This document shows, one piece after another, positions 48,801-55,644 of a stretch of DNA of 64,000 nucleotides. The position numbers were made by a program, and so were the translations under genes. Source of the DNA: Guillardia theta CCMP2712 (lineage: Eukaryota; Protista; Cryptophyta); assembly GCF_000315625.1 (NCBI RefSeq), contig NW_005434639.1, forward strand, positions 257,511-321,510, written 5' to 3'. Under the pieces are notes generated by a model that worked only from the letters and a program-made list of their open reading frames with translations, was not told the DNA's origin and ran no database searches. The stretch's first letter is position 1. Each line of letters begins with the position of its first letter.

Positions 48801-50123
48801 AATCAAGATTGCATCAGTGATGATCAAGCTAGTATCTAAATGCTAGTATCTACAACTAGTGCTGCCAATCCGAAGCGACGTCACCAACCCCTTTCACTTC
48901 CTTTTTCCTTCTTGTCCAAATCCTCTTCGGGCAGTGCTACGTCCCAAAGATCTCAACGATTTGACCATCAACGAATGTTTTCAATGTCAAAGGCCTACTC
49001 CGGAGGAATTTCAAACCAAGGCACCACCTCTACTCCAACAGTATCAGCTCAAACTCTTCATCGTATCCTCATACCGATGTAGGTGTTGAAGAACAACAGC
49101 TCCTTCTACCCATAGCAACATCTCAGTTGCAAGATTCTCTTTCCACGATGCAAAATTGGTTCCTACTCGCCATTCTTGTCCTCATCCTCCTGAACTCCTT
49201 CTCTCCCCGCTCCTCCTCTGCGTTCCTCCAGTAAATCCTCACCTTCGGCATTTTCCGCCGCTCAAACTTAGGAACTTCGAGCTCACAGAAGTATGATCGA
49301 AACTTTGGTGTGCTAAGTTTTTCCACACATTTTCATAAAATTTCAAATTTATTCAAATGTTTCGTTGAAATTTGATATCGGAGTTCAAGCCCGAAAATGC
49401 AATTTGCTCCACCCCACCCTGGTAGAACAATATACCATCGTGGAATTGATCAACTATACCCACCAAAGTTCAATGAAAAGTACCGGTGATCTGAGACTTT
49501 ATGAAACGTAGTACCCCTACCCTACACTCTTACATCTTCGAATACAGATTGCTTCCCCACCCCCACCCCTTGCTTTTTAACCACCCCTTGGTGCAGACAT
49601 CGTGAAAATCACCCGTAGTAAAGTCAAAAGGACTGTACCCCTACCTACACCCTTGCCGGCGTGTATGGAATACCCCTTCATTTGAAGGCAAATTTGTGAG
49701 AAATGAACGGGTGGGAGGGATTGTGCAGACCCGTTCTGCTCTACGTACCCCCACCCAACAATTCGTAAGGTGACCCTAACCTCCCACCCCACCCCCATGA
49801 TAGACACCTCTCAACAACAACAGGAGGAGACTTCAAGGAGGAGACATATAAGGCCTGCTAGCTACATACTTCCCCTTCTTCTCTTTCGCTGCTTGGTTCC
49901 TGCCTCTCTCCTCCCCCTCCCACTGATTCGATTGCTCAGACGCTTCTTCTCTCCCTTCTTCTTCGTCCAGGCTCTCCTTCTTTCAGTTTTCTAGCCCTGC
50001 ATTCAACTTTGCTGTCATCCCATGAAAAGTTGCCGGACATTTTGAAGTTCGAACAGTCTGGTCGGTAGTTTCCGCTAATCACAGCTTTCGAAGCACTGAA
50101 GCAAATACTGGATCATTAACAAA

Positions 50124-52255
50124 ATGAGATCAACATATTCATTGCTCTACATCTCTTTGTTTTCTCAATTTCTCAACTCCTCTGCATGGCTTGTACCTGC
50201 AACTTTCTCGCAATGCATCAGGTCCGTTGGAAAACCCCAGCACAGAGGAGCTTGTGGGATGACAAGGAACGTTGTGGTTTCTTTGAAGATGAATCAGGGC
50301 GAAGACAGCAAGGCTAAAGATGTCGTTCTTGGTCCAGGACTGTTTGCTCCTGATATTCAATTGGGGCCCAATGCTGACGATTTTGTGCCTGAAGAGAAGA
50401 TCATCTCAAGGATACAGATGTCAAACTTGTTCTCTTTCTTTGACACAGATTCAAATCAGAAGATTGACCTCGATGAGCTTGTTTTGCTTTCTGGTGCAAT
50501 CGGCAAAGAATGGTCTAAAGAAAAGGCTTTGCAAGCTCTCTGGGAGATTGATGAAAACAAGGATGGGTTTGTAACCTTCGAAGAGTTCTACCGTTGGTAC
50601 TTGGCCGGGAATAAGAAGGTTCTCGAAGAAATGCCAGTGCCCCAGAAGGTCTCAGCCTTTCTGCAGAATAGCAGATATTCCAAGGCAGACGTGGAGAAAC
50701 TTTTCCAGTTAGCGGATGAGAACTCTAACGACAGAATTGAGCACGCCGAATTTCTGGAGCTCATGTCAACCTTGGGACACAACATGACCTCTGAGAAAGG
50801 CACTGAAGTGATTGCGAGATTGTCTACAGTGTCAGGAGGGTCAGAGCCCTCTGTCACGTTCCCAGAGCTGTATGCCTGGATCTCGGCTGGGTATGACGTG
50901 GCTACTGCCCAAGTTCAGACCTCCATTCTTCTTGAACCGTCGGAGAAAGATAAGAAGCGTGTTTTTGTCCGAGGATTCCCATGGAGGGCGAAGGAAGGGA
51001 CGGCTCTGAAATACTTCTCGAGATGCGGTGAGGTACAGGAAGTGCAAATGATCAACTGGTCACGTGACGGGACCCCGAGTGGAAGATGCATCGTGACCTT
51101 CAAGGATGAAGAGAGTGTCGAGAAAGCGATTGCCTTGCATCGTAACAGAATGGGGAAAAGATGGCTGGAGGTGTACCGAGTCAATGAGGGAGATAAGGAG
51201 GAGATTCATAAAGTCGACAAATCTCTTCACGGGGCATTGATTGGAATCAAAGGTAAGGTTGTGCAAGAAATGCAGCAGGAGAGCGGAGCTCGAATCTTCT
51301 TTGAAACCGAACCAGAGGATGTCATGATTATCAAGGGCCGTGAGTTTGAGCGAGTCAAGGCGTGGGCCATGGCTAAGGCAGTCATCGACGACAACACAAT
51401 GGAGGAACATCCTGTTGATATCTCACTCCATGGCAAGCTGATCGGAGCCAAAGGCAAGCTCAAGAAGATTATGGAGGAACAAAGTGGGGCACACATTGTT
51501 TACCGGCAAGAGCCAAAGCCAAGATGCTGCATTTGCGGATCGTTCGAGGCCCGCCAGAGAGCCTGGCAGCTTGTGCAGGGGAAGATGTGGGAATTCCAGC
51601 AGGCGAACGAACAGAGGTTCCCTCTTGATCGCAAGTACCATGGCACTTTGATTGGCAAAGGAAGTGTTGTTGTACGCGCAATCGAAGATGAAACTGGCGC
51701 GAGGATCCGGTTTTCTAGCGGAAAGCAATACAACTCTCGTGAAGAAAAGGGTTATGAGGGTGAGAAGGAAGGCGCTGAGGTATGTTTTGCTGTTCTCACC
51801 TACAAGATCTCAGTCGTCGTTCTACAGAACTTGGATAGTGGGTGTATGGTTGTGAGGGGAACTCCAAAGCAGTGCGAGAATGCCTGGAAGTATGCACAGG
51901 TACCACTAGCTAGCACACTTAGATAGTGTGAATGAGGTTTTTCAGATCTTCTTGAAGGAGATGCCTCTGCTGTTGAGCGAGCTTCGAGATGAAGACATTG
52001 CACTCGGAGCACTCAGATCCCTTCCTCTTTCTCCAGATCAGGTCAGTTTGCGCTGCTGTCATTTGCGGTGCCATAACTGCATTTATCAAGGTGTGGCAAG
52101 CTGCGGTCGAGGAAGCAACCAAGAAGGCCAGACAGTCTGTGGGAGTGCATGATGAGAAGAGCCAAGTAAGCCCCGATCGTGTGCATACTGTCATTCTAGT
52201 GACATGTTTGGCTTCACAGGGCAGCAATGCGGAGGAAAGTATTCTTTTACTCTAA
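50124..52255 (+). CDS. Putative plastid-targeted EF-hand (x3-4) - RRM - KH (x3) RNA-binding protein
   Basis: Leader MRSTYSLLYISLFSQFLNSSA-W. EF loops DTDSNQKIDLDE, DENKDGFVTFEE, DENSNDRIEHAE. RRM RVFVRGFPW..SGRCIVTF..MGKRWLEV. KH motifs HGALIGIKG, HGKLIGAKG, HGTLIGKGS. 3' introns lead to TAA at 52253-52255. Confidence 0.85.
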
Positions 52256-52740
52256 ACTAACAGATTAGGCGTTGTATCCTTGAATGTTGAAACTGAGACT
52301 TTTGTGTCCGTCCGTATGGGCCCTCATGTTGGCCTCTTGCTGGGCTCTGATATCATGGACTTGAATCTTGCGCTAGCAAGCTGCTGCGCGAGTCTTCGTC
52401 GGGATCAGCGTGTCTGCCAGCCGCCAGGAAGGCATGCTGGACCTTGTAGTCAGGCCTTTCGATCTCACAGTAAACTAGTCTAACAGGCCGCCGCGTTCGG
52501 CCTGTCCTACTATTTTTTATATTGCGGTTGTTAGGGCCGTGCATAGAAAATGCGGCAAGGGGGAGAAGTAAAGGTGCTCGTACGATGATGAAGAAGGGCT
52601 GACGACTCAAGACGTAGAGACAAGTAGCTGATATGCAGGATCCCTCCACTCATCGCAAGAAAACAATCGATGATGCGAAGATCTTTAGCCTCAGTGTGCG
52701 GACTTTGATGTTCACAGCTATCTTCCTTGCACGCTGGACA

Positions 52741-53739: not shown

Positions 53740-55644
53740 CTACCAACCAGAAGGAGATTGGAATCCAAGAGATCTTCCAGTGGCTGTGTCATACACCTGA
53801 TCAAAAATCACGGAAATAACACAAGTTTCGAAGCTACAACTGATCACCTCTCTATCGTATAGACGCTGAGTTGGCCTTGCTGTATACCCTTGTTCGTAGA
53901 GCAAATCTGCATGATGATTTGGAGAAATAAGCACTGGAGTCTTAAGGACGATCCTAGCATATTGATCAGAAACAGTGGGAGAAAGATGCAAGAAAATACA
54001 CACCACGTTACTCCCTCAGTACAAGGTGGTGCAGTGAGGGACCCATAGTACGTATAGTAATTTGCATAGTTGCTTCCGGCTCCCAGCACATCCTCAGCCA
54101 TTTTTGCAGTATCAAACCAAATGCTTGGTTTCACATCCTGACCATATCGAGGATACACATAAGAACCAGCAAGACCATTGGCGTCAAGATTGTAGGTGCC
54201 CTCAAACCCTCCAACACCATCCATGATCGTTTGTAATGATGAGGCAGTGTAAGGACCGACTTCAAGAAAGGCTGAGACGACCACTTTGACGTCTGATGAC
54301 CCTTTGGACGTATGATAAAACTGGATTTCTCCTGCAGTCTGCCTTCCTTGCAGTCTGTGTTCACTGGGAGTATGAATTTGAGCATACTTCAACTCAACTT
54401 CTTCGTCGTTTACTACCATGGTGCCTTGCAATCCTTCGACCTGTGAAAAAACGATAGATTCATCAATAAACCCCGGAAAGCTGGCACGAATGAAAACTTA
54501 CCGTGATCACATTCTTGTACAACGGAGAGATTAATGTGACCTCATAAGGATCCGTCGGACCGACCCATCGAAGCATTTTCAAATTATCATCCCTCAAGAC
54601 GTTCAATTCAAAATTGATCGGACTTTGATTTTGTCCGTTCGCACAGACTCCATATGAACCTTTGATATCACCCCAATGATTAGGACCTTTCTTTCCACTG
54701 TATGCCCAGATTTCGCCATCAACATTTGGAAGCCAACCTCCATGATTCACGTGAAAGGAGTATGCAGGAGTTGGATAGGCGGGGTACGCGTTCAACTGAG
54801 TATTTGCACCTACAGCAGGGCTCTGGTATTGCACATCATTTTGAAATACAAACTGATTGCTGGATGATCCTGATGGCGCAACATTCACATATCCATTCCC
54901 CAGTACATTATCAGCCTTCTCCGGAGAGTGAACGTCATATTCGAAAGGATCGATCTTCATCAAACTTTGCTTTCTTGTGTTCTTCTTCTTGCTTGGAGAC
55001 GACGGTGCATCCCAAGATGCGGGAGAAAGAAGTTTTTCTAATCCGCCTGTATTGGAATCTTTGCTTTTCCTCTCTTGCTTATTCGAGGCTCCTGTACTTG
55101 CAAAGGTCTGCCTGTGCCGATCGAAGTACTTGTCGAGCTTCCGAGTGAAATCATCTTTATGCCCCGCTCGAATGTTCCTGAACTCTTTTGCCAAAGCAGC
55201 ATCGGACAATTGCTCGAATCTACCGAAATCGTCACGTTGCTCTGCCAGCATACTTCTGGCTTTGGACTTATATGACTGGTATTCCACATTTGTTCCAAAT
55301 GGGTAGGCTGTTGAGGTAGGGCCAGTTAAGAAGCCAATCGTATCAGCCGTTGTCATCGCAATACCATCTTGTGTCACAATGCCAGGTGTGTAAGTGGTAG
55401 TGGGAGTTTGATACTCAACGTTGTTCCACGTGTACCCCAGCGTGTTTTCCTGTTGAGAACCGGGAAAGTACCATGTGACAGGCGGCGTGTCGTACATACC
55501 ATCATATGCCAACATCATTCTACCAGAGCCTAGCAAGTTCGTGCGAGACAAAGACAATGATGACGACGCAAGAGCAATCAGAACCAAAAGAGCGGTAGCA
55601 GCCACAGCAGCAGCCACCATGGCCTGCCGTCCACGCCGCCGCAT
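53740..55644 (-). CDS. Signal-anchored alpha-carbonic anhydrase-like protein, probably acatalytic
   Basis: WAYSGKKGPNHWG, CANGQNQSPINF, QIHTPSEH, GEIQFYH, YYTYYGSLTAPPCTEGVTW, ARPTQRL; N-terminal hydrophobic anchor and a ~280-aa spacer. Confidence 0.85.

What the first reader, a model, noticed from the sequence alone, without database searches (positions are those of the whole stretch)
50124..52255. Putative plastid-stromal Ca2+-sensing RNA-binding protein (EF-hands + RRM + three KH domains)
Seen: one exon (50124-51780) carries a signal peptide ending SSA-W, a transit-like stretch, three canonical-looking EF loops plus a degenerate fourth, an RRM and three KH domains. Two KH domains have an intact GxxG; the third reads GKGS. 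Established: an aromatic residue at +1 after the signal peptide marks stromal import in red-secondary plastids. Inference: this could couple plastid Ca2+ transients directly to plastid mRNA stability or translation. I do not recognise this domain combination from any characterised protein.
Basis: partly seen in the sequence, partly recalled or inferred. Interest (0 to 1): 0.8.

Follow-up and report, generated by a model that had tools for sequence, protein, structure and literature searches.

The report
Cryptophyte plastid-targeted EF-hand RNA-binding protein
This is a real, expressed gene of the alga Guillardia theta whose protein joins a calmodulin-like calcium-binding module to four RNA-binding domains and carries a conserved plastid import signal, so it may link plastid calcium signals to plastid RNA, though no function has been tested.

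Summary
The window is Guillardia theta nuclear DNA. The gene is GUITHDRAFT_108686, whose public model starts 45 codons too late and so lacks the signal peptide.

- **Gene model:** Transcript contigs from three studies give a five-exon mRNA. The CDS is 50124-52255 and encodes 644 aa.
- **Domains:** Pfam finds two EF-hand pairs, one RRM and three KH domains. The RRM resembles the quasi-RRMs of hnRNP H and GRSF1. KH1 and KH2 keep GxxG; KH3 reads GKGS in nearly all relatives.
- **Calcium loops:** EF2 is canonical in 18/18 orthologues, EF3 in 16/18 and EF1 in 13/18. EF4 is degenerate in 16/18.
- **Targeting:** All 11 relatives with a complete N-terminus (nine orthologues, two paralogues) keep a signal peptide followed by an aromatic residue. 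It is W in every orthologue, Y or F in the paralogues. A basic, acid-poor transit peptide ending in M follows, as in curated cryptophyte plastid precursors. Stromal import is therefore likely, but not shown.
- **Distribution:** An exhaustive search of 1.84 billion representatives found this architecture only in this family and one paralogous clade. All named sources are cryptophytes. No paper mentions the gene.

Calcium-controlled RNA binding remains an inference. I rate it a new variant of known kinds (EF-hand sensor-responder fusions; plastid RNA-binding proteins), of moderate to high interest.

The parts
49839..50123 (+). 5' UTR. It holds a 7-codon uORF starting at 50022 and an in-frame stop at 50097.
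   Evidence: Transcript contigs of three studies start at 49839-49862. uORF and in-frame stop.
50124..51779 (+). Coding exon 1 (aa 1-552): signal peptide, transit peptide, N-terminal motif, four EF-hands, RRM, KH1, KH2 and the first half of KH3.
50124..50186 (+). Signal peptide, aa 1-21, ending S-S-A before W22.
   Evidence: Hydrophobic core and small residues at -3/-1. Conserved in all complete orthologues.
50187..50291 (+). Transit-peptide-like region, aa 22-56: W at +1, no D/E, 5 K/R, pI 10.9, ends in ..SLKM.
   Evidence: Same look as curated cryptophyte plastid precursors.
50322..50366 (+). Conserved short linear motif VVLGPGLFxPxIQ[LV]G (aa 67-81), function unknown, disordered in the model.
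   Evidence: Alignment A1. Mostly pLDDT below 50 in that stretch. No Pfam match.
50442..50477 (+). EF-hand loop 1 (aa 107-118), canonical in Guillardia. Position 12 is Gly in 5 of 18 orthologues.
50550..50585 (+). EF-hand loop 2 (aa 143-154), canonical in 18/18 orthologues.
50715..50750 (+). EF-hand loop 3 (aa 198-209), canonical in 16/18 orthologues.
50823..50867 (+). Degenerate fourth EF loop (aa 234-248). It is canonical only in Hemiselmis and in the Hanusia paralogue.
50961..51176 (+). RRM (aa 280-351), quasi-RRM-like, with RGFPW and KRWLEVY motifs.
   Evidence: Pfam RRM_1. Best solved relatives are hnRNP H qRRM1/2 and GRSF1.
51195..51392 (+). KH1 (aa 358-423), type I, GxxG = GIKG.
51396..51602 (+). 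KH2 (aa 425-493), type I, GxxG = GAKG. It holds a conserved Cys pair in the beta-prime strand.
51606..51899 (+). KH3 (aa 495-576), interrupted by intron 1. The loop reads GKGS (last Gly replaced). It has a disordered acidic insert in the variable loop.
51780..51827 (+). Intron 1, 48 nt, GT..AG, in frame and stop-free. This is why the raw ORF reads on to 51926.
   Evidence: Joints in contigs of 3 runs.
51828..51899 (+). Exon 2 (aa 553-576).
51900..51945 (+). Intron 2, 46 nt.
51946..52041 (+). Exon 3: conserved C-terminal helix LLSELRDEDIALGALRSLPLSP.
52042..52090 (+). Intron 3, 49 nt.
52091..52165 (+). Exon 4: second C-terminal helix.
52166..52219 (+). Intron 4, 54 nt.
52220..52255 (+). Exon 5 with stop codon. 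An acidic stretch is followed by the conserved hydrophobic C-terminus ILLL.
52256..52332 (+). 3' UTR (transcript contigs end at 52297-52332).

Best explanation
A nucleus-encoded protein found, as far as sources are named, only in cryptophytes. It most likely enters the ER through a signal peptide and is passed on to the plastid stroma by a transit peptide that starts with an aromatic residue. The mature protein (about 588 aa) has five parts. First comes a disordered N-terminal motif. Next is an acidic calmodulin-like module with two or three working Ca2+ sites (EF2 always, EF3 nearly always, EF1 in most species). A conserved linker follows. Then comes a basic single-strand nucleic-acid-binding block: one quasi-RRM plus three type I KH domains. 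Last is a conserved helical C-terminal region ending in a hydrophobic tail. The most likely mode of action is a sensor-responder. The RNA-binding block holds plastid transcripts. Ca2+ binding to the fused EF module then changes either RNA affinity or partner recruitment, so that stromal Ca2+ elevations feed into RNA stability, processing or translation. Shown here: gene structure, expression, domains, conservation of Ca2+ ligands, and conservation of the targeting signal. Inferred: stromal location, RNA rather than DNA as ligand, and any Ca2+ dependence.
For: Gene and mRNA: spliced contigs from three studies include ATG 50124, with an in-frame stop upstream. Domains pass Pfam cut-offs. AlphaFold folds the EF pairs, the RRM and three beta-alpha-alpha-beta-beta-alpha KH domains at mean pLDDT 74. 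Ca2+ ligands are kept across orthologues: EF2 18/18, EF3 16/18, EF1 13/18. Targeting: 11/11 complete N-termini (nine orthologues, two paralogues) have a signal peptide followed by W (Y or F in the paralogues) and an acid-poor basic stretch ending in M. The presequence is 43-51% identical between Guillardia and Hanusia, against 85-95% for the N-terminal motif, EF, RRM and KH regions and 70% for the C-terminal region, as expected of a targeting peptide. The mature part has no hydrophobic segment. Curated cryptophyte plastid precursors look the same: ASA|F-x-x-P-S..., with transit peptides ending ..RM or ..SM. The aromatic +1 plus positive charge rule is documented (PMC3017844), and ASAFind accepts F/Y/W/L (PMC12136025). 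The EF module has pI 4.6 and the RRM-KH block pI 8.8. Stromal Ca2+ signals exist in a red-derived secondary plastid (diatom, PMC11663583). A chloroplast fusion of four EF-hands to an effector domain, calredoxin, is a proven Ca2+ sensor-responder (PMC4911631).
Against: There is no localisation, Ca2+-binding or RNA-binding experiment. The +1 residue is W. Among the 23 reference cryptophyte precursors I read, +1 is almost always F (one Y), and the four xxAW endings I searched for matched only inside mature sequences, so W is within the accepted set but atypical. The Guillardia signal peptide core is weakly hydrophobic (best 10-residue Kyte-Doolittle mean 1.5, against 2.1-2.8 in orthologues). SignalP and ASAFind could not be run. 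EF1 has Gly at position 12 in five orthologues and EF4 is degenerate, so Ca2+ stoichiometry is not fixed. KH3 lacks the last Gly of GxxG. The model's domain arrangement is unreliable (pTM 0.37), and it does not dock the N-terminal motif or the C-terminal tail onto the EF module. KH domains can also bind single-stranded DNA; the best-scoring KH match in the fold search is the FBP KH3-KH4 complex with DNA.
Confidence: 0.55

Rival explanations
1. It is a constitutive plastid RNA-binding protein. The EF-hand module is structural, a Ca2+/Mg2+ buffer or a fixed protein-docking domain, so Ca2+ does not regulate RNA binding.
For: EF4 is degenerate in 16/18 orthologues and EF1 has lost its bidentate Glu in 5/18. 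The structure model predicts no intramolecular EF target. Nothing measured here speaks to regulation.
Against: EF2 is canonical in 18/18 and EF3 in 16/18 at 47-54% overall identity, which argues for selection on Ca2+ binding itself. The EF-to-RRM linker is strongly conserved. Fused four-EF modules act as switches in calredoxin (PMC4911631).
Confidence: 0.22
2. It stops in the periplastidal compartment and acts on nucleomorph-derived, eukaryote-type mRNAs.
For: The quasi-RRM and type I KH are eukaryotic cytoplasmic/nuclear domain types. The nearest non-EF cousin, P0045, carries SAP and HeH domains and no signal peptide. W rather than the usual F at +1 has, as far as I could find, not been tested in cryptophytes.
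Against: Periplastidal proteins are marked by the absence of an aromatic +1 residue (PMC3017844). Here an aromatic residue is kept in 11/11 N-termini and the transit peptide has the net positive charge needed for envelope passage.
Confidence: 0.12
3. It is a stromal protein that binds single-stranded DNA at the plastid nucleoid (replication, transcription bubbles) rather than RNA.
For: KH domains of FBP and hnRNP K-type proteins bind ssDNA. The FBP KH3-KH4/ssDNA complex is the best-scoring KH match in the fold search.
Against: The RRM is closest to G-tract RNA-binding quasi-RRMs. RRM plus multi-KH layouts such as IMP1/IMP2 are mRNA binders. No DNA-specific domain is present.
Confidence: 0.07
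4. It is a secretory-pathway or ER-lumen Ca2+-binding protein, and the transit-peptide-like stretch is fortuitous.
For: It has a signal peptide and EF-hands, as in lumenal multi-EF-hand proteins (resemblance from general knowledge only).
Against: RNA-binding domains make little sense in the ER lumen. The acid-free basic stretch, the aromatic +1 and the terminal M are conserved across divergent species while the sequence itself drifts. There is no ER retention motif at the C-terminus. ER residents tend to carry acidic N-termini that block onward import (PMC3017844).
Confidence: 0.04

Closest known systems
Calredoxin (CRX), Chlamydomonas reinhardtii chloroplast (PMC4911631)
   Same: A chloroplast protein in which four EF-hands are fused directly to an effector domain, giving a one-polypeptide Ca2+ sensor-responder.
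   Different: Its effector is a thioredoxin domain, not RNA-binding domains. It belongs to the green lineage and has a simple transit peptide. No sequence relation beyond the EF-hands.
hnRNP H/F and GRSF1 quasi-RRM proteins
   Same: The RRM aligns best to hnRNP H qRRM1/2 (E 1e-17) and to the GRSF1 qRRM, and shares R-G-[LF]-P-W and R-[YW]-[IL]-E-V-[FY]. From my own knowledge, GRSF1 is itself an organellar (mitochondrial) RNA-binding protein.
   Different: Those proteins have two or three qRRMs and no KH or EF-hand. Here there is a single RRM, with an aromatic residue still at the RNP2 position (VFVRGF). G-tract binding is untested.
IMP/ZBP1 (VICKZ), FUBP/KSRP and PCBP multi-KH proteins
   Same: Tandem type I KH domains with GxxG loops. 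IMP proteins also combine RRMs with KH domains. IMP1/IMP2 KH34, FBP KH3-4 and PCBP2 KH1-2 are the best KH matches in the fold search.
   Different: They are cytoplasmic or nuclear and have no EF-hands or targeting signal. Domain numbers differ. Identity is only about 20%.
Plant chloroplast ribonucleoproteins (cpRNPs such as CP29A, CP31A)
   Same: Nucleus-encoded, eukaryote-type RRM proteins imported into the stroma, where they stabilise plastid mRNAs (general knowledge, not tested here).
   Different: cpRNPs have two canonical RRMs and an acidic N-terminal domain, with no KH and no EF-hand. No specific similarity was found.
Diatom KEA3 with C-terminal EF-hands (cited in PMC11663583)
   Same: A protein of a red-derived secondary plastid that acquired EF-hands thought to read stromal Ca2+.
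   Different: It is a thylakoid K+/H+ antiporter with one EF pair, unrelated in function.

Membership tests
EF-hand / calmodulin-like four-EF module | Paired helix-loop-helix units with 12-residue loops bearing D at 1, D/N/S at 3 and 5, and E/D at 12. | tested here: met
   Pfam EF-hand_7 x2 and EF-hand_1 are above cut-off. Loops 1-3 are canonical in Guillardia and loop 4 is degenerate. The model shows eight helices in two pairs.
EF-hand / calmodulin-like four-EF module | Actual Ca2+ binding with a conformational change. | not testable with these tools
   Needs ITC, 45Ca overlay or spectroscopy on recombinant protein.
Quasi-RRM (hnRNP H/F, GRSF1, ESRP type) | RRM fold with degenerate RNP1/RNP2 and conserved loop motifs R-G-L-P-[WFY] and R-Y-[IV]-E-[VIL]-F. 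| tested here: inconclusive
   Best PDB relatives are qRRMs. RGFPW and KRWLEVY are present, and the RNP1 position reads SGRCIVTF with no aromatics. RNP2 still has Phe (VFVRGF). The motif definitions are recalled from the literature, not taken from a tool.
Type I KH domain | Beta-alpha-alpha-beta-beta-alpha topology with a GxxG loop between helices 1 and 2. | tested here: met
   KH_1 x3 at E 7e-31. Topology seen in the model. GIKG and GAKG are conserved. KH3 reads GKGS, so it departs at the last Gly.
Cryptophyte bipartite topogenic signal for stromal import | ER-type signal peptide with small residues at -3 and -1. | tested here: met
   Hydrophobic core and S/A at -3/-1 in Guillardia and A-x-A in orthologues. 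Judged by hand; SignalP was not available.
Cryptophyte bipartite topogenic signal for stromal import | Aromatic residue (or Leu) at +1 of the transit peptide. | tested here: met
   W in all nine orthologues with a complete N-terminus, Y or F in the two paralogues. Rule from PMC3017844 and ASAFind. W is rare among the reference cryptophyte precursors examined.
Cryptophyte bipartite topogenic signal for stromal import | Transit peptide with net positive charge and few or no acidic residues. | tested here: met
   The acid-free stretch after the cleavage site runs to E60 and holds 5 K/R; the W22-M56 transit peptide has pI 10.9.
Cryptophyte bipartite topogenic signal for stromal import | Demonstrated import into the stroma. 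| not testable with these tools
   Needs presequence-GFP in Phaeodactylum or immunogold EM in Guillardia.
Calredoxin | Four EF-hands fused to a thioredoxin domain. | tested here: not met
   No thioredoxin domain in Pfam. The resemblance is in logic only.
IMP/VICKZ family | Two N-terminal RRMs followed by four KH domains arranged as di-domains, in a cytoplasmic protein. | tested here: not met
   One RRM, three KH, EF-hands and a presequence. Only fold-level similarity of about 20% identity.

The most novel reading that the evidence does not exclude
This is the first protein in which a Ca2+ sensor is fused directly to RNA-binding domains inside a plastid. It would be a one-polypeptide switch by which stromal Ca2+ elevations (for example at light-dark transitions or under high light or oxidative stress) change the binding, stability or translation of specific plastid transcripts. 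It would have been invented in the cryptophyte lineage and duplicated there.
Probability: 0.3. Interest if true: 0.75.

Novelty: new variant of a known kind. Interest (0 to 1): 0.55.

Why it matters
Stromal Ca2+ signals are well documented in plants and now in a diatom. Very few stromal proteins that read them are known, and none acts on RNA. A protein that joins a calmodulin-like module to a quasi-RRM and three KH domains behind a conserved plastid presequence is a concrete candidate. It can be purified and used to ask whether Ca2+ reaches plastid gene expression post-transcriptionally. The finding also corrects a public gene model whose late start hid the targeting signal, which would keep the protein out of predicted plastid proteomes. 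Finally, it shows a lineage-restricted family assembled from eukaryotic domain types and recruited to a red-derived secondary plastid.

Tried and rejected
- **Literature:** searches for the locus tag and for EF-hand + KH + RRM in Guillardia, and for EF-hand RNA-binding proteins in the stroma, found nothing relevant.
- **ESM Atlas:** the look-alike search returned only generic multi-KH clusters at TM 0.23-0.34.
- **Foldseek against PDB:** the whole model gave only domain-wise matches (Prp24, FBP, IMP, PCBP, calmodulin), none with the full architecture.
- **Pfam on the ends:** scans of the N-terminal 60 aa and the C-terminal region, at E up to 10, gave nothing.
- **Docking idea:** I considered that the N-terminal motif or the C-terminal hydrophobic tail docks onto the EF module. 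The model leaves both largely below pLDDT 50, so there is no support, though this is not a refutation.
- **W at +1 in reference sets:** I searched the ASAFind 2 supplements for six xxAW endings. Four of them occur in the cryptophyte file, but only inside mature sequences. One diatom reference precursor has ASA|W.
- **Profile word search:** repeating the word search with an alignment profile added no new taxa.
- **PF28441:** this accession is listed among precomputed domains for most relatives but is absent from the local Pfam copy, so I could not identify it.
- **Earlier findings of the scan:** nothing bearing on this gene.
- **Not run:** SignalP and ASAFind scoring were unavailable, and I did not retype the published matrices.

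Full report
**Identity of the locus.**
The window ORF 50124-51926 is 100% identical to GUITHDRAFT_108686 of Guillardia theta CCMP2712. NCBI calls it a hypothetical protein and UniRef auto-names it 'Calmodulin'. The public model has 599 aa and starts at Met46 of the window ORF, so it lacks the first 45 residues.

**Gene model and expression.**
I laid contigs of three independent studies, plus a few raw RNA reads, on 49800-52600.
- They give one spliced form, running from 49839-49862 to 52297-52332.
- It has four GT..AG introns: 51780-51827 (48 nt), 51900-51945 (46 nt), 52042-52090 (49 nt) and 52166-52219 (54 nt).
- Joining the exons gives a 1935-nt CDS (50124-52255, 644 aa) whose last 599 residues equal the public protein exactly.
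- The mRNA includes ATG 50124. An in-frame stop lies at 50097, and the only upstream ATG (50022) opens a 7-codon uORF. ATG 50124 is therefore the first usable start.
- Intron 1 is in frame and stop-free, which is why the raw ORF runs past the true exon end at 51779.

**Domains.**
- Pfam gives KH_1 x3 (7e-31), EF-hand_7 x2 (2e-17), EF-hand_1 (4.5e-13) and RRM_1 (2e-9).
- AlphaFold2 on a 23-sequence alignment folds all domains (mean pLDDT 74) but not their mutual arrangement (pTM 0.37). It shows two EF pairs, one RRM, three beta-alpha-alpha-beta-beta-alpha (type I) KH domains and two long C-terminal helices.
- KH3 carries a disordered acidic insert, and its last strand and helix are encoded by exons 2-3.
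- The RRM aligns best to hnRNP H qRRM1/2 (E 1e-17) and to GRSF1. It shares RG[LF]PW and R[YW][IL]EV[FY] and lacks RNP1 aromatics.
- The EF module is acidic (pI 4.6) and the RRM-KH block is basic (pI 8.8).

**Conservation of functional residues across 18 orthologues.**

| Element | State |
|---|---|
| EF2 loop | canonical in 18/18 |
| EF3 loop | canonical in 16/18 |
| EF1 loop | canonical in 13/18; position 12 is Gly in five |
| EF4 loop | degenerate in 16/18; canonical in Hemiselmis and the Hanusia paralogue |
| KH1 | GIKG-type loop kept |
| KH2 | GAKG-type loop kept |
| KH3 | GKGS (last Gly replaced) in nearly all |

The pattern suggests two or three working Ca2+ sites.

**Targeting signal.**
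- Every relative with a complete N-terminus has the same layout: a hydrophobic signal peptide, then an aromatic residue, then an acid-poor basic stretch that ends in [LV]-x-M just before an acidic mature start. These are Guillardia, Hanusia, Hemiselmis, Baffinella, five metagenomic orthologues and two paralogues, 11 in all.
- The signal peptide ends in small residues. The aromatic residue is W in all orthologues and Y or F in the paralogues. The acid-free stretch is 18-44 residues long.
- Between Guillardia and Hanusia the signal peptide is 43% identical and the transit peptide 51%. The N-terminal motif, EF, RRM and KH regions are 85-95% identical and the C-terminal region 70%. This is typical of targeting peptides.
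- The mature part has no hydrophobic segment, so a lumenal or membrane fate is unlikely.
- Curated cryptophyte plastid precursors in Appendix S9 of ASAFind 2.0 look the same: ASA|F-x-x-P-S..., with transit peptides ending ..RM or ..SM.
- The rule that an aromatic +1 residue plus positive charge gives stromal import, while its absence leaves a protein in the periplastidal compartment, is stated in PMC3017844. ASAFind accepts F, Y, W or L.
- Caveats: W is rare among the reference cryptophyte precursors I examined. The Guillardia hydrophobic core is weak. No predictor could be run.

**Distribution.**
- The word-index search found about two dozen clusters. All named ones are cryptophytes: Guillardia, Hanusia, Hemiselmis, Baffinella.
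- A profile search added none.
- The exhaustive phmmer search of 1.84 billion representatives found only 23 proteins below 1e-30. Apart from family fragments, giant EF-repeat proteins and generic multi-KH or multi-RRM proteins, the full EF + RRM + 3 KH + C-terminal layout recurs only in a paralogous clade: the Hanusia protein P0024, a cluster that includes Rhodomonas salina, and P0029/P0030.
- That paralogous clade is monophyletic at 100/100 support.
- One more distant cousin, P0045, has SAP + HeH + two RRMs + three KH and the same C-terminal helix, but no EF-hands and no signal peptide. This suggests that an older nucleo-cytoplasmic RRM-KH module gained EF-hands and a presequence.
- PDB, the Atlas and the literature hold nothing with this architecture.

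**Mechanism.**
- Shown: an expressed gene, a conserved presequence of the stromal type, conserved Ca2+ ligands, and conserved RNA-binding folds joined by a conserved linker.
- Inferred: stromal location (about 0.75), RNA as the ligand (about 0.8) and Ca2+ control of that binding or of partner recruitment (about 0.45).
- Plausibility comes from calredoxin, a chloroplast fusion of four EF-hands to thioredoxin that acts as a Ca2+ sensor-responder (PMC4911631). It also comes from stromal Ca2+ elevations under high light and H2O2 in a diatom (PMC11663583).
- Rivals are a constitutive RNA-binding protein with a non-regulatory EF module, a periplastidal protein acting on nucleomorph mRNAs, a nucleoid ssDNA binder, and an ER/secretory protein. 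They are weighed in the rival section.

**Unexplained conserved elements.**
- The motif VVLGPGLFxPxIQ[LV]G lies just after the transit peptide.
- An acidic stretch followed by a hydrophobic C-terminus (LMLL, LMIL, ILLL) is present in 16/16 complete orthologues and absent from the paralogues.
- A Cys pair sits in KH2.

**Verdict.**
I rate it a new variant of known kinds, with interest 0.55.

Noticed in passing
window 50124-50258: The public model of GUITHDRAFT_108686 starts at Met46 and so omits the signal peptide and most of the transit peptide. Proteome-wide targeting predictions made on that model would miss this protein.
   Followed up: yes
window 50022-50045: A 7-codon uORF (MKSCRTF) lies in the 285-nt 5' UTR, in frame with the main ORF but closed by a stop. 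A further in-frame stop lies at 50097.
   Followed up: partly
window 52220-52252; orthologue C-termini: All 16 complete orthologues end in an acidic stretch plus three or four hydrophobic residues (ILLL, LMLL, LMIL, LLML). The paralogues do not. It could be a docking or degradation signal; no explanation was tested.
   Followed up: partly
window 50322-50366: A conserved, disordered motif VVLGPGLFxPxIQ[LV]G lies between the transit peptide and the EF-hands. It has no Pfam match.
   Followed up: partly
window 51507-51512 (aa 462-463) in KH2: Two adjacent Cys residues in the beta-prime strand of KH2 are conserved (second Cys in at least 90% of sequences). A redox role is conceivable but untested.
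   Followed up: no
P0045 (metagenomic, 777 aa): A cousin protein has HeH + SAP + two RRMs + three KH and the same C-terminal helix, without EF-hands or a signal peptide. It may resemble the nucleo-cytoplasmic ancestor of the plastid family. Its taxon is unknown.
   Followed up: partly
P0007/P0008, P0047, P0002: Several database relatives diverge into unrelated sequence at or next to the exon ends found in Guillardia: P0007/P0008 one residue after the end of exon 2, and Hanusia P0002 right after exon 4. P0047 does so after FSEVI, inside the Guillardia exon 1. These look like unspliced introns in gene calls or assemblies, and the first two hint at conserved intron positions.
   Followed up: no
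window 53844-54431 (-): An ORF fragment matches the eukaryotic-type (alpha) carbonic anhydrase family (PF00194, E 9.5e-14). It probably belongs to the next gene downstream on the opposite strand. A separate transcript contig begins near 52555.
   Followed up: no
EF1 loop of P0004, P0006, P0010, P0011, P0013: One orthologue subclade has Gly instead of Glu/Asp at position 12 of EF1, which should weaken or abolish Ca2+ binding at that site. EF2 stays canonical everywhere.
   Followed up: partly
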